Positions 5,390 to 58,454 of a stretch of 64,000 nucleotides of DNA are shown here, piece after piece. The notes below the pieces were generated by a model. The model ran no database searches and was not told where the DNA came from. It was given only the letters and a program-made list of their open reading frames with translations. The position numbers and the translations under genes were made by a program. How positions within the stretch are numbered: position 1 is the first letter of the stretch; each line of letters opens with the position of its first letter. Origin of the DNA: Stylophora pistillata (taxonomy: Eukaryota); the NCBI RefSeq assembly GCF_002571385.2, contig NW_019218356.1:47441-111440 (forward strand). The letters run 5' to 3'.

Positions 5390-6900
5390 TAAGTTAAGTT
5401 TAGCACCTCTAGCAATAAACGATTGTGTGTGCCTAAGAGTGCGTGATGCAGGTATTCTGATGTGCGCTGGGTTCGTCTTACAAGATTTTAGGTTATGGCC
5501 ATGATCCACAGCCTTGTCTAAAAAAGGTTTACATGGATGCCCTTCAGATTCTAGGATACATATCAATTCTTTCCTCGTCAATTTCTGAGGCCTAGTTACA
5601 AGTGACTCTACAGTATCTCATGACATTTAGACATCTATTCTGCACTCTCTGTAGATGTTCTTCGAGGTAGATGGGCAGCCCACCCCAGACAGGCGAGGAA
5701 AATTATAACAAAGGTCTGATCTTAATGATACATTTTGCAGTTGATAGGCCCGATATTAATAGGGGGTGGAATTGGACAGGACTTCTTGAAGTTGATCCAC
5801 ATATCTTTGGTCTTCTTAGCAGTTAGCTCCATTTTATTCTGCACAACCAAACTCTCCAAGTAAGTCACAGCATTCTGCATTTGACTGTCAGAGTCCTTAG
5901 AGACAAGTTCATATAGGGTGCAGCCATCAGCGTACTTGCAAGTGGATACAGGTATTCCCCTGGGGATGCGGTCTTCAATATCGTTGACATGTACGTTAAA
6001 AAGTGTAGGAGAAGGGAAACCGCCCTGGGGCACACCAGTAATGACCTCACCATGTCTGGAAAGGACTCCCGGGAGCTTAACCTATTTTTTTCATCCTGAT
6101 AGGTGGTTTTGTGTCCATTTCCATAAGCTCTTGGTGACACCCATACTGCCGAATTTAGTCAACAGAACACCGTGATCTACTAGATCGAAGACTTTTCGGA
6201 AGTCTGCAAAGACCACATGCACGCCATTTTATGGAGTTCCGGAATCTGTAGCGTTGTACCAGTCTTCTGTGATGCTGGCAAGCGCAGTTAAGGTGGTTAA
6301 AGTCTCCGGTAATTATGATACCCGCCGATGGTCTCTCTATCAGCAAGTTGTCCAAACGCTCAGTGATGTAGTCGATCAATTCTCTCTCCTCAGTACACGT
6401 ATTCCCTGGCGGAAAGTATAAAACAGCCATAACTATACAACTGAAAGGTCTTGGAATCCGAGGTGGCGTGTAAAGTAACCCCAACACCTCTCTTTCGCTG
6501 ACTTTGAGATTCTCTGGGCGTATACTTGGAATAGAGCTGTGAACATAAGCCAGGACACGGCCGCCTGGTGTAGATCTGTCTTTATAAAACACATTGAAAG
6601 ACTGGCCAATGCTGATAGCAGTTGATGGTACACCGTCTGCCAAACAGACTCAGTTACAATGGTCACGGTTGCATTACTCGTTTCGACGACTCAGTGCAGC
6701 TCGTCAACTTTATTTGTGATATGGCAGGCACTAGTTATTAAGTACCTTGGAGGTTATGCTGGTCCTTGGAGGGATGTTTATACAGTTCGTCGCTAAATGC
6801 CCGGCTCCGTATTTTGCTAATTGTGCACGCCGATGAGTAATTATGACCGTGTGAATACGCTGCGGAGATAACAAGGAAACTCGTTGTTTTACTTTAATCC
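5390..6900 (-). mobile_element. Degenerate, internally deleted non-LTR retrotransposon (LINE, L2/CR1-like) with AP-endonuclease and reverse-transcriptase remnants
   Basis: Minus-strand frames give the endonuclease motifs VTES, DR...GGRVLAYV and IIITGDFN, then RT motifs DFRKVFDLVDH, GVPQG and KYADG (YADD-like). Multiple frameshifts and stops; boundaries approximate. Confidence 0.85.
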
Positions 6901-10489: not shown

Positions 10490-10576
10490 GACACTCAGCT
10501 TCAAATTGCTTCGACACTCGACTTCAAATTACTTCGATACTCAACTTCAAATTGCTTCGACACTCAACTTCAAATT
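10490..10576. repeat. 23-bp minisatellite, ~3.8 copies, just downstream of the GPCR stop codon
   Basis: gacactcaacttcaaattgcttc-like units start at 10490, 10513, 10536 and 10559. Confidence 0.9.
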
Positions 10577-33954: not shown

Positions 33955-34235
33955 GTTGAAACTTACCCAAACCGACTGGTTAGGTAAGAAAATTGATATG
34001 AAATCAAAAGATTTGGTGATCACTGACTAACTTGTTCGCCAGTAATGACGAGGCTCTTACTCTTTAACTAGACGTTTCGATTAATTTGTCGTTGAAACTT
34101 ACCCAAACATTGGAGTACCGACTGGTTAGGTAAGAAAATTGATAAGAAATCAAGAGATTTGGTGATCACCAACTTGTTCGCTAGTAATGACGAAGTTCTT
34201 AGTATTTAACTAGACGTTTCGATTCATTTGTCGTT
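33955..34235. repeat. Imperfect tandem duplication, ~136-bp period, two copies
   Basis: gttgaaacttacccaaac...ccgactggttaggtaagaaaattgat...ctagacgtttcgatt.atttgtcgtt begins at 33955 and again at 34091. Confidence 0.9.
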
Positions 34236-38672: not shown

Positions 38673-40358
38673 TTAACGCGGCAAAGACAACATTACAGCA
38701 AAGTAGGAGACAGTCACCCCAACAATCTGAAAAAAGTGTAGAAGAAACATAAATCCTGTTGACATTAAAGAAAACAAAATGCAGATCAATTTAAAATATT
38801 TCATTTATGTATTCTCCTTCGTGAAAAAATGGTCTAGCGTTTTATGGACATTATCATCACTTACATCTTTTGAGGATAATCAAAATGTGCATGACTAGTT
38901 AGATCCTCACCGTCAAGGACATTGACTTAGTAATGACAACCAGTCCCCCGACAGATAAACCTTTTGGCTCTCCTTGAAGGTCTAGTAAGAACATCAACAT
39001 TCCAACCTGGAAGAGATTACATGCAAATGGATGGGTAATTTAAGAAATTACGTAAGGAAAGGACTCTGGAAAGTCCACCAGTACTATTTCTTACAGTTTC
39101 CTGATACAACATCGACATTATTGATATGCATGGTTTGTATAGAGGTCACCTTGCCTTCCTCTGATCTGGATACGGGTAATCTCGGCAAAATCCTTTGAAA
39201 ACTGTGAATCTGAAAAAGAAGAAACCAAAAGTGTTAAAACGCTTAAAGGAAGAATTTTGAGGTAACTCAGATTTCCTAGTGTGGTCTCGGATTCTCTTTG
39301 AATGACAGATGAAATGCTGACAACTTAAATTCCCGGTAATATACCTTTTCGCTCACTTTGGATGCAGAATATAGGACTAGCAACAAAAATGTTGCTGCAA
39401 TCAGACACCAACACGAGGTGATGGCTAAGGTTATTGAATCTGTGCCCTCTGTTAGAATAAAGGTGTTGTAATAGCTGATACACAATAGCGGCATGTAAAT
39501 GGATATGATTCCAAGGAGAAATGGTGACAGCATCTTGTCTGCAAGCTCGACTACCTCCGATAACTTGTGATGTTCCATCTTTAAAGACAGGAAATCTTCA
39601 GAAAGGGGAGGTAAAGATGACATTCTCTTGTAAAGCCCATCATAACATTCCTCCAGAATGAGACAAGTAACATAGAAGAAAAGAACCGTAAGCAACCACC
39701 CTACAGACCCAGTAAATAAAGAAATCAGTGCAAATACTCTAAAACCAAACCACCAATTCCAAGGTCCACAACAAGCAATAGTAAGGCCTAATATTTGATC
39801 ACAAACACAACAGAAAGCGATGTTAGTCAAGAATACTAAACAAGATACGAAGAAGGTTTTTCTTGACTTTTTCTTAACCCCATTTAAATTAATGAATTTA
39901 ACATTAGCAAGTAGGCTGCGAATAAATTTTTCAAATCGAGATTTCCTTTTTAGAGTTAAAGGGAGAACAATTACTGACGTTATCCCACAGATTCCTATCA
40001 AAACCTGGCCTAAGGCAAACATCAGAAACATGTAAGCTGAGCCTGAAAGAAAAATCCCAAAGAAAGCCATTACGACATTCAACCAAATGAGAGACACCAT
40101 CAAGCCGCAGTATATCTTCGAAAAGATATGCTTTCCAGCTGCCATGTGTTCCAACTGCTTCAAGTCTGTGTGTCCGTAATAGGATCCAAATAGCTTCATC
40201 AGCTTCAGAACTGGGCTGTATATTTCGTTCAATGTCTTTAACATTCTTTTGTTACCATTTGTGGCCTCGTGTATTGGAACAACGAAAGAAGTGGAGCTCT
40301 TTGAACGAGATTGAAAGGGTGCGGAAACCCCATTCACAGGCAACGCTTTGGAAGACAT
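38673..40358 (-). CDS. Gustatory receptor-like (Grl) 7TM protein, copy E (closest paralog of D)
   Basis: Exons 40358-39345, 39209-39150, 39006-38911, 38726-38673. Exon 1 has the same length (1014 nt) as in copy D and the last exon encodes an identical peptide. Confidence 0.88.
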
Positions 40359-40666
40359 GATTTTGCCACTAAAATATGTTTTCCCTTCGTTCTGTATTTA
40401 TGTTGTAAGCCATTGTTATTCTAATGACTTCAAAATTAGTTTTGTGTTTCTTTAATTTTCCCTTGCTTAATTTTGGTAGTATTTGTTTTCTAGGAAATGA
40501 TTACAACTTCATTGGGTTGATTATCCTCACGTTTCTATATGACTTAATAGTAATGATAATAATATCGATAATAATAATGAGAATGAGTTATTCACAGCAT
40601 ATCCATATGAAAATAAAACGCAGCTCTTTATCTATGAAGGCCCTACAAAAGTATATATAGATATAT

Positions 40667-42142
40667 AGTTAGATATAGCTCTTTGGCATACAAAGCTTTG
40701 CTTTCATGTCCAAATTGAGCACTCTATCTAAGATGAGTCATTGCTGTTGCAATTGCGCATGCTCGCTAGTTTACTCTAGTTTGCACACTCTGGCATGGCT
40801 TAGACGATACCACAAAGGTTGGGTCGTTTGGGGTGACCGTCTCGGTTCTCCCCCATCCTAGCATTAGCACTGCACTGATGAGGCCCAGAAGGCCGAAACA
40901 GTACTGTCTGCAGTTAGATATAGCTCTTTGGCATACAAAGCTTTGCTTTCATGTCCAAATTGAGCACTCTATCTAAGATGAGTCATTGCTGTTGCAATTG
41001 CGCATGCTCGCTAGTTTACTCTAGTTTGCACACTCTGGCATGGCTTAGACGATACCACAAAGGTTGGGTCGTTTGGGGTGACCGTCTCGGTTCTCCCCCA
41101 TCCTAGCATTAGCACTGCACTGATGAGGCCCAGAAGGCCGAAACAGTACTGTCTGCAGTTAGATATAGCTCTTTGGCATACAAAGCTTTGCTTTCATGTC
41201 CAAATTGAGCACTCTATCTAGGATGAGTCATTGCCGTTGCAATTGCGCATGCTCGCTGGTTTACTCTAGTTTGAGCACTCTGGCATGGCTTAGACGATAC
41301 CACAAAGGTTGGGTCGTTTGGGGTGACCGTCTCGGTTCTCCCCCATCCTAGCATTAGCACTGCACTGATGAGGCCCAGAAGGCCGAAACAGTACTGTCTG
41401 CAGTTAGATATAGCTCTTTGGCATACAAAGCTTTGCTTTCATGTCCAAATTGAGCACTCTATCTAGGATGAGTCATTGCCGTTGCAATTGCGCATGCTCG
41501 CTGGTTTACTCTAGTTTGAGCACTCTGGCATGGCTTAGACGATACCACAAAGGTTGGGTCGTTTGGGGTGACCGTCTCGGTTCTCCCCCATCCTAGCATT
41601 AGCACTGCACTGATGAGGCCCAGAAGGCCGAAACAGTACTGTCTGCAGTTAGATATAGCTCTTTGGCATACAAAGCTTTGCTTTCATGTCCAAATTGAGC
41701 ACTCTATCTAGGATGAGTCATTGCCGTTGCAATTGCGCATGCTCGCTGGTTTACTCTAGTTTGAGCACTCTGGCATGGCTTAGACGATACCACAAAGGTT
41801 GGGTCGTTTGGGGTGACCGTCTCGGTTCTCCCCCATCCTAGCATTAGCACTGCACTGATGAGGCCCAGAAGGCCGAAACAGTACTGTCTGCAGTTAGATA
41901 TAGCTCTTTGGCATACAAAGCTTTGCTTTCATGTCCAAATTGAGCACTCTATCTAGGATGAGTCATTGCCGTTGCAATTGCGCATGCTCGCTGGTTTACT
42001 CTAGTTTGAGCACTCTGGCATGGCTTAGACGATACCACAAAGGTTGGGTCGTTTGGGGTGACCGTCTCGGTTCTCCCCCATCCTAGCATTAGCACTGCAC
42101 TGATGAGGCCCAGAAGGCCGAAACAGTACTGTCTGCAGTTAG
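40667..42142 (+). mobile_element. Tandem array of six 245-bp units, each carrying a hammerhead ribozyme (non-LTR retrozyme-like element)
   Basis: Units start (agttagatatagctc) at 40667, 40912, 41157, 41402, 41647 and 41892, with a final agttag at 42137; no long ORF; flanked by TA-rich/(TA)n sequence. Confidence 0.92.
40869..40914 (+). ncRNA. Type I hammerhead ribozyme (first of six identical copies; the others start at 41114, 41359, 41604, 41849 and 42094)
   Basis: Stem I ACUGCA/UGCAGU; core CUGAUGA; stem II GGCC-CAGAA-GGCC; GAAA; stem III ACAG-UA-CUGU; GUC cleavage triplet (cut after 40908). Confidence 0.95.
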
Positions 42143-42164
42143 TTATATATATATATATATATAT
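42143..42164. repeat. (TA)n microsatellite running into a 340-N assembly gap
   Basis: ttatatatat... followed by Ns at 42165-42504. Confidence 0.95.
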
Positions 42165-42809
42165 NNNNNNNNNNNNNNNNNNNNNNNNNNNNNNNNNNNN
42201 NNNNNNNNNNNNNNNNNNNNNNNNNNNNNNNNNNNNNNNNNNNNNNNNNNNNNNNNNNNNNNNNNNNNNNNNNNNNNNNNNNNNNNNNNNNNNNNNNNNN
42301 NNNNNNNNNNNNNNNNNNNNNNNNNNNNNNNNNNNNNNNNNNNNNNNNNNNNNNNNNNNNNNNNNNNNNNNNNNNNNNNNNNNNNNNNNNNNNNNNNNNN
42401 NNNNNNNNNNNNNNNNNNNNNNNNNNNNNNNNNNNNNNNNNNNNNNNNNNNNNNNNNNNNNNNNNNNNNNNNNNNNNNNNNNNNNNNNNNNNNNNNNNNN
42501 NNNNCTTGGGAACTTCCCAATTGCTGATGTTTTTACTTCTGATTCACTTTGCAGTTGCTAATAAACGAAAAGGTTAATGCAAGTCAGCATGAAGGATTTC
42601 ACGACCTCGCAAATAACAAAGATTTAAAAAGACTCGAAATTAAACGGCAGACTTGGATGATAACCAGTTATCTTTAGCAGACAAAACGACAAATTTATAT
42701 AGTGTTTTAGATTCAGAATATATAATGTGGAAATTTACGCGAACAGACGAAAACAAAAACTTATATTTGTAGCAAGCAGAGCTTGCCTTTTCCTGCAACA
42801 CTTGTATAA

Positions 42810-45307: not shown

Positions 45308-48300
45308 TCAGTTTCTCTTCATAGCCCTGATCTTGAAGGGAGCTGGATACTGAGTGATTGCTCTTAGATGCTTAATCGTAGGTGAGCCCTTGCCTTCCTC
45401 CGGAAGAAATGTAAACTTGTGAAGCATCCAAGACAAGATAACATACATTTCCAATTTAGCAAGAGTTTCGCCTGGACACACACGGCGTCCAGCTCCAAAG
45501 GGATAAAAATTTCCTTGATTCGTCATCAAATTCCCATCTTTATCAAGGTGGCGATGAGGGTTAAAAAGGTTTGGCTCCTTCCAACAAGCAGGATCAAGGT
45601 GAATTCCTTCTGTATCCGGATACACGATGGTATCCTTAGGGACTCGATAACCACAAAGGGAAGTGTCCTCTACAGCTCGGTGAGGTAACGCTTGGGGTAC
45701 AACGTTGCCTAGTCTCAAGCTTTCCATTATAGTCGCATGGATAAGAGGCAGTCTAGGGCGATCCTCCAGATGTGGCATGCGATGTCGACCAACGACGTCA
45801 TCCAGTTGTTTCTGAATATCGTATTGGTAATAAGGGTACTGGACCAGATAGCCCAACGCAAATGTCAGTGCATGCGCAGTAGTCTCGTAGCCAGCAGTAA
45901 ACATGTCTTGTATGGTGTTGATCAGATGGTCTTCAGAGAAAAGGGAAGCCTTGTTTTCTTTGGTCTCTTCCATAGCTTCCCTCTGGGCATGCAGTAAGGC
46001 GTCCATCAAATTAGAACCGGGTACCTGAGGATCGAAAGTTGCCATTCGTTCTCTCAACTTAAGGCGGATGATCTCCAGAGTAGAAAGAAATATGTCGAAT
46101 ATTTTTTTCCGCGAACTGAAAGGAAATAATTGGCTCAAGGGGAAAAAGTCCAGGAACATGATGGCTTGAAATTCTTTATAGCTCTTTAAACCGAGTTCGT
46201 TTTTGCGGATTAAGTTACTAATTTGAGGATCACTAAGATCCCAGCCGTTTCCAAATATTATTCGTCCCAGGACCTCCACAATGCACTGGTTTAGAAAATC
46301 GGCGGGATCGAAGTCCTTCTGGTGCTGTTCCTCAAGAATCCGCAGAAGTTTCGAAGCCGTGTAAGTCACTCTCTCTTCAATTACGGCTGTATTGGAGATG
46401 TGTTGTCTTAGGGCAGAGATAAGGATACGTCGATGAATCTTCCACGACAATCCGTCACTGAAAGCTATGTTCTTGAAGCCTAACGAAAGAATCAAAACAC
46501 GATAGATATAATTATTTTTCCAGAAAATATTTGGAATATTTATTTGTGAACATATAATTTTTTTGGCTGACGGGAAGCTTATTTGGTAACCATGGAGCTT
46601 GTGACTATGAGCTAAAAACACGGCAATCGTGTGTGAACTGTTATTAATGGAACATAGACGAGATCGTAAAAACAAAAAATAGATATGATAACAACTATAA
46701 TATAAATGTAATAATAATAATAATGTTTAAATACGCACACACGGACGAATAAACAATGGAACAGACACTAGACACATCCTACAAAAAACAAAACAAAACA
46801 AAACAACAACAACAAAAAAAAAAACAATACAAAAAAACATCAAGTTATATCTTCTTGAAGAGAATCAGAAAAGGAGAAATGCTTTTAATCTAGATCTTCA
46901 TAGAGAGAGAGTAGAGCGTTTTGTCTATTATGACTAAGAGAAGCAAATACTTTTGGCCTCTGATATTACTAAAAAGATTGCAACAGATGAGCCTTCCTAA
47001 AAGAATCCCACAGAATACTCACCAAGGCTCAACATTTTCAAACTGTAGGTCTTAGGTCTTCCACCGTATTCGGAAGACTTTGTTACCAGTACCTCCCGGA
47101 CAGCTTCTGTTGAGCCAGCAATAACAAATTTGTAGCTTCCGAGCTTTAAGGAGAACAGTCTTCCATAATTCTTTCGCAAGCTATCACAACATGACAACAA
47201 TTAGCCTTGAATGATAACTTTATATGCTAATCACTATGATCACTGAAACCTAATTAATTCATTCTTAGTCAACGCCTAGCCAGCAGTGCAGGCGTCTTCT
47301 TGTTAGGGCGAGTTAACGTTAAGAAGCGCACGATCGTTTATTTCACCGGCCATGTTTAATTTGGTGTCAGAGTCGACGGCAGTGGAAGGGAGTCTGAAGG
47401 CAGCGAAGGTAATATTCACTCCCACCGCTTCGTTATCGAGATCTTTTAGCTCATCCTAGGTGTAAAAACCTCTAAAGCTCACGAGTAACGTAAAACAAAG
47501 ACAACAAAACATTAAAAACAATAGCGTATAGCAACACAATATACCTCATGAAACAAAGAAAACTTCGTCAGGTTTTTACACCGAGGATGACCCGATCTTT
47601 TTCTAAGGTGGGAAGTTCAAGAGTCTGAACTACTCTAAGTCGATTTGTCTTTCTACAGTACAACCTTTAATAACATACAATCTATTTCGTTTCCACTTGA
47701 ACGGTTTTTAACTTTTCGCTGCACAATTATGCATTATGCACGCCGCCATAATCTAGATGTACGTATGATGCACGATCCTCGCAGTAGAGAGCACTATTTA
47801 TGCAATAGCGAAAATCAGACCTGAAAAAAATCAGGCCTGTACGGGATTCGAATCACTGACCTCTGCGATACAAGTGCAGCGCTCTACCAATTGAGCTAAC
47901 AAGCCAACTGGGAGCAGGCCGTTAAGTTGATTCGTAATAAACCCGTGATGATAAATCAGATACGATGAATATATGAAGTTCATATATTTTGAACTGCGGT
48001 TATAGATACATATAGAGCGCTGCACTAGTATCGCAGAGGTCAGTGGTTCGAATCCCGTACAGGCCTGATTTTTTTTTCAGGTCTGATTTCTCGTGCATCG
48101 TATGTATCTATAATCGCAGTTCAAAATATGTGAACTTCATATATTCATCGTATCTGATTTATCATCACGGGTTTATTACGAATCAACTTAACGGCCTGCT
48201 CCCAGTTGGCTTGTTAGCTCAATTGGTAGAGCGCTGCACTTGTATCGCAGAGGTCAGTGGTTCGAATCCCGTACAGGCCTGATTTTTTTCAGGTCTGATT

Positions 48301-57552: not shown

Positions 57553-58454
57553 CATACGTATGATGCACGATCCTAGCNNNNNNNNNNNNNNNNNNNNNNN
57601 NNNNNNNNNNNNNNNNNNATAACACTTTGCTAATATTTGCCAATCGATGGCGTCTATGATAAGTGTTTCTCCAAACTGACAGAACTAAAGACAAAAAAAA
57701 AGCAATTTCAATTGAAAAAAAAATCTGCTGCTGTGGTGTTACTGCAATTATTTAAATTCTTTAGAAATTCCCATGGAGTACGTCAAAGCACTCCTTATGC
57801 ATGACAATATATATGTTTTCTTCTTTCCTTCTTTATTTCCTATGGATTTTGTAAAGGTAAAAGCTTGAGGTCAAGTTTTCAAACATTGTACACACTACCA
57901 ACCTATCAACTATATTAGAAATAAATATTTTTGCCGAAAAAAATTGCAATTTAATAAAGTAAGAATACGATGAATATATGAAGTTCATAAATTTGAACTG
58001 CGGTTATAGATACGTATGATGCAAGATCCTCGCAGTAGAGAGCGCTATTTATGCAACAATGAAAATCAGACCTGAAAAAAATCAGGCCTGTACGGCATTC
58101 GAACCACTGACCTCTGCGATACTAGTGCAGCGCTCTACCAATTGAGCTAACAAGCCAACTGGGAGCAGGCCGTTATGTTGATTCGTAATAAACTTCATAT
58201 ATTCATCGCATCTGATTTATCATCACGGGTTTATTACGAATCAACTTAACGGCCTGCTAACAGTTGGCTTGTTAGCTCAATTGGTAGAGCGCTGCACTAG
58301 TATCGCAGAGGTCAGTGGTTCGAATGCCGTACAGGCCTGATTTTTTTCAGGTCTGATTTTCATTGTTGCATAAATAGCGCTCTCTACTGCGAGGATCTTG
58401 CATCATACGTATCTATAACCGCAGTTCAAATTAATGAACTTCATATATTCATCG
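57553..58454. mobile_element. Second insertion of the tRNA-Thr-derived fold-back element (contains an N gap)
   Basis: Same left start (tacgtatgatgcacgatcc) and right end (tcatcg) as the 47760 copy; 13-bp direct repeat TATTCTTACTTTA at 57540-57552 and 58455-58467; tRNA-like heads at 58084-58156 (-) and 58266-58338 (+), anticodon AGT. Confidence 0.8.

What the first reader, a model, noticed from the sequence alone, without database searches (positions are those of the whole stretch)
40667..42142. Six-copy, 245-bp tandem array of intact hammerhead ribozymes: a retrozyme-like circular-RNA element
Seen: six head-to-tail 245-bp non-coding units, each containing a complete type I hammerhead (ACUGCA-CUGAUGA-GGCC-CAGAA-GGCC-GAAA-CAGUACUG-UC^UGCAGU). 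All six ribozymes are identical. Established: tandem ~150-400-nt repeats with type I hammerheads (non-LTR retrozymes; newt and schistosome satellites; also reported in corals) are transcribed, self-cleave to monomers and circularise. Inference: a + strand transcript would be cut after 40908, 41153, 41398, 41643, 41888 and 42133, releasing five exact 245-nt monomers able to form circRNA. The class is known, but I cannot tell whether this family has been described.
Basis: partly seen in the sequence, partly recalled or inferred. Interest (0 to 1): 0.9.

Follow-up and report, generated by a model that had tools for sequence, protein, structure and literature searches.

The report
Coral hammerhead retrozyme tandem array
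This is a real six-unit array of a small non-coding mobile repeat whose RNA cuts itself with a hammerhead ribozyme, but it belongs to the stony-coral "retrozyme" family that was described and tested at the bench in 2020, so it is a good example of a known element and not a new kind.

Summary

Cervera & de la Peña (NAR 2020, PMC7229834) described 225/245-bp retrozymes in Acropora millepora and other stony corals. They reported self-cleavage at about 0.8 per minute and linear and circular RNA on northern blots. Their cloned ribozyme differs from this one only at three loop-2 bases, and their degenerate primer matches units 3-6 exactly. An earlier follow-up in this scan reached the same verdict on another array of this genome.

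What I add:
- The genome holds 642 exact copies of the ribozyme and 184 identical array ends (TGCAGTTAG-TTA(TA)n).
- Across 21 arrays the 3' end is fixed and the 5' end is variably truncated, as in target-primed reverse transcription.
- About a third of the arrays abut or are fused to 3' ends of (TA)n-targeting Penelope-like elements.
- The RNA body keeps a folded structure, with 15 compensated base pairs.
- Contigs from four polyA RNA-seq studies cover the unit.
- Three loci share one mixed unit order, which a single monomer circle cannot explain.

Circularity and cleavage of this exact variant remain untested.

The parts
40640..40666 (.). TA-rich 5' flank (AAAGTATATATAGATATAT), the left part of the likely (TA)n-type target
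   Evidence: Read directly. TA-rich or (TA)n sequence also lies 5' of about 9 of the other 20 arrays compared.
40667..42142 (+). Retrozyme array: six 245-bp units plus a 9-nt terminal remainder
   Evidence: TRF period 245, 6.0 copies, 99%; unit alignment A1; monomer matched at many other loci of the genome.
40667..40908 (+). Unit 1 (242 nt, starts at monomer position 4), variant A
   Evidence: Variant A = 68G>A, 82C>T, 105G>A, 121A>C, 122G>A relative to the genome's master unit.
40909..41153 (+). Unit 2, variant A
   Evidence: Three of the five variant-A changes break pairs of the conserved fold (columns 70-206, 107-128, 106-129 of A2).
41154..42133 (+). Units 3-6 (41154-41398, 41399-41643, 41644-41888, 41889-42133), identical to the genome-wide master unit M
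   Evidence: 100% identical to units at more than 40 other contigs.
40869..40914 (+). Hammerhead 1. Helix I is ACUGCA/UGCAGU. The core is CUGAUGA...GAAA. Helix II is GGCC/GGCC with loop CAGAA. Helix III is ACA/UGU with loop GUAC. The cut falls after C40908.
41114..41159 (+). Hammerhead 2, cut after 41153
41359..41404 (+). Hammerhead 3, cut after 41398
41604..41649 (+). Hammerhead 4, cut after 41643
41849..41894 (+). Hammerhead 5, cut after 41888
42094..42139 (+). Hammerhead 6, cut after 42133. Its helix I 3' strand comes from the 9-nt terminal remainder.
   Evidence: best Rfam hit, 25.7 bits, 42088-42153.
42134..42142 (+). Fixed 3' terminus of the element, TGCAGTTAG
   Evidence: The same end occurs in 18 of 21 arrays compared. 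The exact junction string GTACTGTCTGCAGTTAGTTATATA occurs 184 times in the genome and 0 times in the reversed control.
42143..42165 (.). TTA(TA)n tract at the 3' junction, followed by a 339-N assembly gap (42166-42504)
   Evidence: (TA)n is the published preferred target of Neptune, Naiad and Hydra Penelope-like elements (PMC8557442).

Best explanation
The array is one insertion of the stony-coral non-LTR retrozyme, a small non-autonomous retroelement.

How it most likely works:
1. The + strand is transcribed.
2. [quoted passage not shown]
3. These RNAs fold into a conserved branched structure that brings the ends together through helix I.
4. A host RNA ligase closes part of them into circles.
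5. New genomic copies are made by target-primed reverse transcription at (TA)n tracts, using the enzymes of a Penelope-like element. Synthesis starts 9 nt beyond the cut site and runs over several unit lengths, which gives tandem arrays with a fixed 3' end and a ragged 5' end.

Shown here by computation: the anatomy, the intact core, dispersal and copy number, the fixed 3' and variable 5' ends, the (TA)n junction, the conserved RNA fold, presence in RNA libraries, and physical linkage to Penelope-like 3' ends.

Taken from the literature on a near-identical relative: cleavage rate, circular RNA, and ligation by tRNA ligase.

Inferred: the promoter, the identity of the reverse transcriptase, and whether the template is circular.
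For: Array and ribozymes.

Same family as the published, bench-tested A. millepora retrozyme:
- The 42-nt ribozyme matches all six sites with exactly 3 mismatches, all in loop 2.
- Primer 108R matches with no mismatch in units 3-6.
- The cloned sequence in the supplement shares the 23 nt after the cut and the body blocks.
- The paper reports 225/245-bp variants, kobs about 0.8 per minute, circular and linear RNA on northern blots, and relatives in 12 stony corals.

Mobility:
- At least 220 monomer matches from 740 candidates, with many units 100% identical across more than 40 contigs.
- 642 exact ribozymes against 0 in the control.
- 184 exact 3' junctions against 0 in the control.

Target-primed signature: among 21 arrays, 18 end at TGCAGTTA(G) followed by (TA)n. 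The 5' ends fall at monomer positions 4 to 190, with 5 of 22 starts at positions 4-9, where the unit itself reads TAGATATAG.

Penelope link:
- A GIY-YIG-like ORF end plus a minimal hammerhead plus a (TA)n tail lies tail-to-tail with arrays across one (TA)n tract in L035, L043, L048 and L049.
- It is fused directly to retrozyme position 9 in L044, and fragments lie beside the array in L036.
- Similar fusions occur in coral metagenome contigs L058 and L150.
- 8 of 10 endonuclease-like hits in the held genome sample lie within 1 kb of an array.
- (TA)n targeting by Penelope-like clades is published.

Fold: 96.7% of cells are paired and 15 pairs carry compensatory changes, against 0-4 in slid controls and 0 of 500 shuffles. 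The monomer MFE is -83.7 kcal/mol, z -3.15.

RNA: contigs from four polyA RNA-seq runs of four studies cover all 245 nt. Some run into the TTATATA terminus.
Against: - No Rfam hammerhead model reaches its gathering score.
- Loop 2 (CAGAA) differs from the tested ribozyme (AGAAA), and loop 2 takes part in the tertiary contact, so the rate of this exact variant is unknown.
- The RNA data are assembled contigs. They cannot show strand, ends, level or circularity, and DNA carry-over was not excluded because no silent control stretch was laid. Contigs that bridge the cut site by 31 nt or more on both sides come from diverged copies.
- The reverse transcriptase domain of the neighbouring element was not seen in any sequence I could hold. 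Its endonuclease ORF has no Pfam hit at E 0.01; only a separate ORF, 5412-6200 of contig L171 (fetched via its 90%-identical homologue P0001), reaches 21.6 of the 22.6 bits GIY-YIG needs.
- Adjacency to Penelope-like ends could reflect a shared taste for (TA)n and not shared machinery.
- Mixed unit orders in several arrays do not fit a single monomer circle.
Confidence: 0.85

Rival explanations
1. It is the same retrozyme, but new copies are reverse-transcribed from linear, uncleaved oligomeric read-through transcripts that carry the 3' TTA(TA)n tail. On this view they are not made by rolling round a 245-nt circle, and the circles would be a by-product.
For: - Three separate loci (L037, L043, L048) share the same mixed order [M][X][M]-3' with different flanks.
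- The window array is A,A,M,M,M,M, and L049 is X',X',M x8.
- The junction TGCAGTTAG|TTA(TA)n is letter-identical at 184 places, although TTA is not what follows TTAG inside a unit. That is what an inherited tail would give.
- RNA-seq contigs run from the last unit into TTATATA and the flank, so tail-bearing RNAs may exist.
Against: - An uncleaved RNA carrying 6-11 ribozymes that each cut at about 0.8 per minute is unlikely to persist.
- Most arrays (12 of 21) are perfectly homogeneous. Alternating patterns (L034) fit a dimeric circle as well.
- Penelope-like 3' ends also stop at ...TTA(TA)n, so a fixed nick site could make the junction uniform without inheritance.
- In other corals the junction varies.
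Confidence: 0.35
2. It is an ordinary satellite DNA that spreads and homogenises by unequal crossing-over and gene conversion at the DNA level. The hammerhead would be a passenger or relic with no role in propagation.
For: It has a tandem head-to-tail organisation, and units within arrays are nearly identical. The newt repeats of this kind were first called satellite 2.
Against: - Hundreds of short arrays are dispersed on different contigs, each with the same 3' terminus and a different 5' truncation point.
- Solo 5'-truncated copies occur.
- Second copies are inserted in the (TA)n tail of a first one (L044, L047).
- Chimeras with Penelope-like 3' ends occur.
DNA recombination predicts none of these.
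Confidence: 0.03
3. The array is not an independent element but the tandemised terminal part (pseudo-LTR) of an autonomous Penelope-like element whose coding part is hidden in the adjacent assembly gap.
For: Penelope-like elements form partial tandems and carry hammerheads near their 3' ends. A gap follows the array. Penelope-like pieces abut about a third of the arrays.
Against: - Most arrays have ordinary unique flanks on both sides and no coding part.
- The Penelope-like 3' ends next to arrays carry a different, minimal hammerhead and no more than a 12-nt box in common with the unit.
- The published coral family is likewise non-coding.
Confidence: 0.04
4. It is an inert copy: the array is a member of the family, but this locus is not transcribed, or the CAGAA loop-2 variant cleaves poorly, so no 245-nt RNA comes from here.
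For: No promoter is known. The RNA contigs cannot be assigned to this locus among several hundred. Loop 2 differs from the tested ribozyme. Units 1-2 carry changes that break three conserved pairs.
Against: CAGAA is the form in 642 genomic copies and in 118 of 126 ribozymes from coral metagenome contigs, so it is the successful form. Units 3-6 equal the master sequence, which matches RNA contigs with no differences (records 2, 7, 16, 24, 27, 30, 32).
Confidence: 0.15

Closest known systems
Stony-coral non-LTR retrozymes (Acropora millepora Rtz 224/245; Cervera & de la Peña, Nucleic Acids Res 2020, PMC7229834)
   Same: - Unit size: a 245-bp variant is reported.
- Tandem arrays from dimers up to 62-mers, non-coding.
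- Type I hammerhead with the same helices I, II and III and the same core.
- The same 23 nt after the cut, the same central block (primer 108R matches exactly), and a highly paired RNA.
   Different: Loop 2 reads CAGAA instead of AGAAA. The body is diverged, with an extra ~15 nt near positions 24-46 and a different stretch at about positions 140-200 (by eye). Primer 108D does not match within 3 mismatches. Cleavage and circles were shown for the A. millepora copy, not for this one.
Amphibian satellite 2 / axolotl retrozymes and Schistosoma Sm-alpha repeats (type I hammerhead tandem repeats)
   Same: Tandem repeats of 150-450 bp, each with a type I hammerhead, transcribed and cut to unit length. 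They are the same class of element.
   Different: No sequence similarity outside the core. The amphibian ribozymes have a one-base-pair helix III and need a dimeric fold, whereas the coral type cleaves well as a single motif. Copy numbers are far higher in axolotl, about 120,000.
Penelope-like elements of the (TA)n-targeting clades (Neptune, Naiad, Hydra; Craig et al., Mol Biol Evol 2021, PMC8557442)
   Same: Insertion at (TA)n, 5' truncation, partial tandems and inverted neighbours, and a hammerhead close to the 3' end. Pieces of such elements are joined to these arrays.
   Different: The array encodes no protein. Its hammerhead is the canonical kind with loop-loop contacts, while the neighbouring elements carry minimal ones. 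The only shared sequence found is a 12-nt box, with modest statistical support.
Plant LTR retrozymes (Cervera et al., Genome Biol 2016, PMC4918200)
   Same: Non-autonomous, ribozyme-processed, circular RNA intermediate, highly paired RNA.
   Different: The plant elements have type III hammerheads inside long terminal repeats, a primer binding site, a polypurine tract, 4-bp target duplications and 600-800-nt circles, and Gypsy elements are thought to move them. None of these features is present here.
Rfam Hammerhead_HH9 (RF02275) / Hammerhead clan CL00010
   Same: Core and helix register align at all six sites.
   Different: Scores of 22.9-25.7 bits are under the 52-bit gathering score. Helix I is shorter and helix III and loop 2 differ from the model consensus.

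Membership tests
Hammerhead ribozyme, type I | Conserved catalytic core: CUGANGA, GAAA, and a cleavage triplet NUH | tested here: met
   CUGAUGA, GAAA and GUC are present and identical in all six units and aligned to the core columns of the Rfam model.
Hammerhead ribozyme, type I | Three helices round the core, with helix I open-ended (5' and 3' ends leave through helix I) | tested here: met
   Helix I is ACUGCA/UGCAGU, 6 bp, open. Helix II is GGCC/GGCC closed by CAGAA. Helix III is A-U, C-G, A-U closed by GUAC.
Hammerhead ribozyme, type I | Reaches the curated score of an Rfam hammerhead model | tested here: not met
   No hit at gathering thresholds. The best is HH9 at 25.7 bits against 52. 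The short open helix I and non-consensus loops cost score; the core is intact.
Hammerhead ribozyme, type I | Self-cleavage in Mg2+ | not testable with these tools
   A ribozyme differing only at 3 loop-2 bases cleaved at about 0.8 per minute. This variant itself is untested.
Metazoan non-LTR retrozyme | Tandem repeats of about 150-450 bp, each with a type I hammerhead | tested here: met
   Six 245-bp units, each with a hammerhead.
Metazoan non-LTR retrozyme | Non-coding, with no LTR, primer binding site or polypurine tract; GC under 50% | tested here: met
   No ORF of 60 aa or more in the array. GC is 0.48-0.49 against 0.30-0.42 in the flanks. There are no terminal repeats other than the units themselves. 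A primer binding site and polypurine tract were not searched for formally.
Metazoan non-LTR retrozyme | Dispersed in many copies, as expected of a mobile element | tested here: met
   642 exact ribozymes and 184 exact array ends on many contigs.
Metazoan non-LTR retrozyme | Unit-length RNA with a stable, highly paired fold | tested here: met
   MFE -83.7 kcal/mol, z -3.15. The consensus fold has 96.7% of cells paired and 15 compensated pairs across three sub-lineages.
Metazoan non-LTR retrozyme | Expressed as linear and circular unit-length RNA | tested here: inconclusive
   Present in contigs of four polyA RNA-seq runs from four studies, with continuity round the unit. Contigs cannot show circles, ends or strand, and DNA carry-over was not excluded.
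Stony-coral retrozyme family of PMC7229834 | Sequence homology to the cloned A. millepora retrozyme | tested here: met
   The ribozyme matches 39 of 42. Primer 108R matches 27 of 27 in units 3-6. The first 23 nt after the cut are identical, by eye. Primer 108D has no match.
Penelope-like element (autonomous) | ORF with reverse transcriptase and GIY-YIG endonuclease | tested here: not met
   The array is non-coding, so it is not itself such an element. It only shares their insertion style and neighbourhood.

The most novel reading that the evidence does not exclude
The coral retrozyme is a passenger of (TA)n-targeting Penelope-like elements, and the sequence shows it directly:
- a fixed start of cDNA synthesis 9 nt past the ribozyme cut;
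- fusions and tail-to-tail pairs with Penelope-like 3' ends of three families;
- a shared (A/T)TTGAGCACT box that could be the recognition signal.

The shared mixed unit order at three loci would further mean that the template is an oligomeric RNA and not the abundant 245-nt monomer circle. Neither point is stated for corals in the papers I could read.
Probability: 0.45. Interest if true: 0.45.

Novelty: already known. Interest (0 to 1): 0.28.

Why it matters
As a finding it confirms that a reader working from raw sequence can recognise a ribozyme-bearing mobile element. The element itself is published, so nothing here changes the picture of retrozymes.

The side results have modest value. The paper left open which enzyme moves animal retrozymes. 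A 2026 preprint (10.64898/2026.07.22.740005) argues for Penelope-like elements in vertebrates. The coral data here point the same way in a cnidarian: a fixed 3' end at (TA)n, 5' truncation, and fusions with Penelope-like 3' ends. The very young, near-identical copies make this genome a convenient place to test which RNA form, circle or linear oligomer, is the template.

Tried and rejected
- Rfam at gathering thresholds gave no hammerhead. I kept the call because the core is intact and a published relative cleaves.
- MFE folding of the isolated 81-nt ribozyme region does not return the catalytic fold and is no better than shuffles (z -0.66). This is expected for a three-way junction held by non-canonical contacts, so I gave it no weight.
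- Primer 108D of the paper does not match.
- Identifying the neighbouring element's reverse transcriptase failed. The held copies are 5'-truncated with no long ORF. Pfam finds nothing in the 143-aa endonuclease-like ORF. The protein atlas gives only a faint GIY-YIG hint. The 150 best library relatives are all short, 93-371 aa. One related contig shows a sub-threshold GIY-YIG, 21.6 against 22.6 bits. A genome-wide RVT_1 search is swamped by other retroelements and hits none of the relevant places.
- A deeper homology between the unit and Penelope-like 3' untranslated regions was tested with local alignments against shuffles. Results are mixed (p 0.004 to 0.8 by pair), so only the 12-nt box is reported, as a lead.
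- Dimeric double-hammerhead cleavage was considered. It is possible, since stem III is a 10-nt palindrome, but the published single-motif kinetics make it unnecessary.
- A scan-findings look-up for Penelope with several words returned nothing useful.
Full report
**1. What is there**

Tandem Repeats Finder reports one strong array in the window: 40667-42147, period 245, 6.0 copies, 99% matches. I cut it at the predicted cleavage sites and aligned the six units.

- Units 3-6 are identical.
- Units 1-2 share five differences from them (positions 68, 82, 105, 121, 122).
- The last 45 columns, which hold the ribozyme, are identical in all six.

The ribozyme reads ACUGCA / CUGAUGA / GGCC-CAGAA-GGCC / GAAA / C-AGUACUG-UC, followed by UGCAGU of the next unit. 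That gives:

- helix I of 6 bp, open-ended, which defines type I;
- the CUGAUGA and GAAA core strands;
- helix II of 4 bp with a 5-nt loop;
- helix III of 3 bp (A-U, C-G, A-U) closed by GUAC;
- the GUC cleavage triplet.

Unit 1 starts at monomer position 4. After unit 6 come nine more bases, TGCAGTTAG, which complete helix I of the sixth ribozyme. Then come TTA(TA)n and a 339-N gap. No ORF of 60 aa or more lies in the array. GC is 0.48-0.49, above the flanks.

Rfam gives no hit at curated thresholds. In E-value mode all six sites match Hammerhead_HH9 in the same register, on the + strand only, at 22.9-25.7 bits against a cut-off of 52. The sub-threshold Rfam score should be stated openly.

**2. 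It is a dispersed, very young family**

- The monomer has at least 220 matches in the window's own 398-Mb assembly, from 740 first-look candidates. Runs of units 100% identical to units 3-6 lie on more than 40 contigs.
- The exact 40-nt ribozyme occurs 642 times (376 + and 266 -), against 0 for the reversed control.
- Public runs that hold the sequence are labelled with one coded organism and with "coral metagenome".

**3. It is a published family**

Cervera & de la Peña (Nucleic Acids Res 2020, PMC7229834) report the following:

- The canonical type I hammerheads of the stony coral Acropora millepora lie in tandem repeats, with two major monomer variants of about 225 and 245 bp.
- A cloned copy self-cleaves co-transcriptionally at about 0.8 per minute.
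- Northern blots show linear and circular RNA of unit size.
- Similar sequences exist in other stony corals; their Figure S2B aligns 12 species.

Their supplement prints the cloned copy and the primers.

- The 42-nt ribozyme of that clone matches each of the six window ribozymes with exactly three mismatches, all in loop 2 (AGAAA there, CAGAA here).
- The reverse complement of their degenerate primer 108R matches units 3-6 with no mismatch and units 1-2 with two.
- By eye, the 23 nt after the cut are identical and the blocks GGATGAGTCATTGCC, GCAATTGCGCA and GAGCACTCTGGCATG.CTTAG are shared.
- This unit has about 15 extra nt near positions 24-46 and a different stretch at about positions 140-200.
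- Primer 108D does not match.

An earlier follow-up in this scan reached the same verdict on a seven-unit array elsewhere in this genome (s1-776252). I checked it independently against the paper.

**4. Insertion anatomy**

I fetched 20 other arrays with flanks and mapped the monomer on them. The 3' end is fixed. In 18 of 21 arrays the last unit runs to ...ACAGTACTGTC|TGCAGTTA(G) and is followed by (TA)n; 17 of them read TGCAGTTAG-TTATATA. Genome-wide that exact junction occurs 184 times and never in the control. That sets a floor of about 184 insertions and a mean of about 3.5 ribozymes each.

The 5' end is ragged. Arrays begin at monomer positions 4, 7, 7, 9, 31, 42, 47, 51, 77, 77, 99, 106, 106, 123, 128, 141, 144, 179, 181 and 190. 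There is an excess at positions 4-9, where the unit reads TAGATATAG and can pair with a TA tract. About nine arrays also have TA-rich sequence on the 5' side.

Other features:

- Second, 5'-truncated copies sit in the (TA)n tail of a first one (L044, L047).
- Inverted pieces occur at 5' ends (L031, L039, L046).
- 120 coral metagenome contigs hold the same ribozyme. There the end is again TGCAGTTA(G) followed by a simple repeat, mostly (TA)n but also (GTTA)n and (CATA)n. Many copies are short 5'-truncated solos.

A fixed 3' end with 5' truncation is the mark of target-primed reverse transcription. (TA)n is the published preferred target of the Neptune, Naiad and Hydra clades of Penelope-like elements, and all three are reported in A. 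millepora (PMC8557442). The 2020 paper proposed such elements as the likely helpers but did not describe these junctions.

**5. Physical link to Penelope-like elements**

A scan for other hammerhead cores in the held loci found minimal hammerheads close to six of the 20 arrays.

In L043 and L044 they belong to a 536-nt segment that is 99.8% identical between the two loci. Its parts, in order, are:

- the end of an ORF with VIY...YIG...R...E motifs and a C-terminal CNLC...CRH, which is GIY-YIG-like;
- a stop codon;
- a minimal hammerhead;
- about 110 nt;
- TTTA(TA)n.

In L043 this end faces the retrozyme tail-to-tail across one (TA)n tract. In L044 it lacks its last ~20 nt and is fused directly to retrozyme position 9 on the same strand. 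The same tail-to-tail layout, with two other families of such 3' ends, is seen in L035, L048 and L049. L036 has a fragment 25 nt from the array. Metagenome contigs L058 and L150 show further fusions.

In the roughly 254 kb of this genome that I held, 8 of 10 endonuclease-like hits lie within 1 kb of an array. The endonuclease-like ORF has over 1000 candidate copies in the genome.

I could not show the reverse transcriptase part:

- all held copies are 5'-truncated;
- Pfam does not recognise the ORF;
- a separate ORF (5412-6200) on contig L171, which was fetched via the EN ORF's 90%-identical homologue P0001, reaches 21.6 of the 22.6 bits needed for GIY-YIG;

The sequence cannot tell whether retrozyme and helper pieces arrived in one event or one after the other at a shared target. 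The direct fusions are what template switching by one enzyme would produce.

A 12-nt box, (GT)ATTGAGCACT(G/T)T, lies about 30 nt before the (TA)n tail in all three families of these 3' ends. It occurs 276 times in the genome against 7 in the control, typically about 190 nt after the ORF stop. (A/T)TTGAGCACTCT occurs twice in every retrozyme unit, at positions 51-61 and 117-127. The second copy is part of the central block that the paper calls the most conserved. Wider alignment of the two element types is only weakly supported, so I report the box as a lead.

**6. The RNA**

The 245-nt monomer folds to -83.7 kcal/mol, z -3.15 against shuffles. I aligned 15 units: four variants from this genome and eleven units 76-81% identical from metagenome contigs, in three sub-lineages.

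The consensus fold of the body has 57 pairs in 8 helices. Of the cells, 96.7% are paired and 15 pairs carry changes on both sides. Slid controls give 0-4 such pairs, and 0 of 500 shuffles reach the observed value. The events are few because there are only about three lineages, but they are spread over six helices. The fold is therefore conserved, as the paper predicted for coral circles.

Three of the five changes in units 1-2 break conserved pairs, so those units look slightly decayed.

**7. Expression**

Six polyA RNA-seq runs from four studies hold 87-91% of the sampled words. I laid the contigs of four runs, one per study, on a permuted monomer (41276-41520) that has the cut site in the middle.

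- Every bin is covered.
- Zero-difference contigs cover both halves.
- A joint from 41519 back to 41276 shows continuity round the unit.
- Contigs bridging the cut site by 31 nt or more on both sides exist in all four runs, but they come from copies with 4-8 differences.
- Several contigs run from the last unit into TTATATA and the flank.

These are contigs. They show presence in RNA libraries, not strand, ends, amount or circularity, and I had no second call to lay a silent control stretch.

**8. Which RNA is copied?**

A single 245-nt circle copied round and round should give homogeneous arrays, and 12 of 21 are homogeneous. The others are not:

- L037, L043 and L048 lie at three different places yet all end [M][X][M]-3', with the same 244-nt variant X.
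- L034 alternates T/C/T/C at position 188.
- L041 reads C,C,T,C at position 202.
- L049 is X',X',M x8.
- The window array is A,A,M,M,M,M.

This needs an oligomeric template (a linear read-through RNA or a di- or trimeric circle) or template switching. The letter-perfect TTAG|TTA(TA)n junction fits an inherited tail. A fixed nick site would do as well, because the Penelope-like ends also stop at ...TTA(TA)n. I leave this open and give the linear-template variant about one chance in three.

**9. Verdict**

The element is a member of a family that is already described and bench-tested in a sister coral, so it is not novel as found.

The side results are incremental and consistent with the helper hypothesis of the 2020 paper and of a 2026 preprint on vertebrates. 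They are the fixed cDNA start at (TA)n, 5' truncation, fusions with Penelope-like ends, the conserved fold with covariation, and the shared mixed unit order.

Noticed in passing
window 39276-40358 (- strand): A 360-aa ORF matches the 7tm_7 chemosensory (gustatory-receptor-like) family (PF08395, E 3e-8). The ribozyme array begins about 310 bp upstream of its ATG, so the insertion sits in the likely promoter region of a receptor gene.
   Followed up: partly
window 47833-47905(-)/48208-48280(+) and 58084-58156(-)/58266-58338(+): There are two inverted pairs of tRNA-like genes (Rfam tRNA, 41-52 bits). The same ~125-nt module lies beside Penelope-like or retrozyme pieces in L044 (3223-3351 and 7040-7139), L048 (6177-6277) and L041 (1679-1737). 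It fits the tRNA-bearing repeat that earlier notes of this scan describe as inserting like Penelope elements.
   Followed up: partly
own genome, e.g. C145:612314-612730, C621:89312-89728, C484:28485-28901, C219:450099-450515: The GIY-YIG-like ORF next to the arrays has over 1000 candidate copies. About ten lie in open frames of 2100-2890 aa, far longer than a usual Penelope-like ORF. These may simply run through N gaps; I could not fetch them.
   Followed up: no
L037, L043, L048 (three loci of the own genome): The same mixed unit order, master unit then 244-nt variant X then master unit, ends three arrays with different flanks. Two of them lie tail-to-tail with Penelope-like 3' ends of two different families.
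   Followed up: partly
L075, L109, L110 (coral metagenome contigs): The retrozyme 3' end is followed by TTAG repeated six times before the (TA)n tract (TGCAGTTAGTTAGTTAG...). This could come from slippage on the terminal GUUA or from later microsatellite growth.
   Followed up: no
window 42166-42504, and L031, L032, L041, L042, L045, L048: Assembly gaps directly abut the (TA)n tail or the 5' end of many arrays of this family. Unit counts in this assembly should therefore be read as provisional.
   Followed up: partly
window 33971-34235 and 10490-10576: Other tandem repeats: 142 bp x 1.8 (90% matches) and 23 bp x 3.8. Not examined.
   Followed up: no
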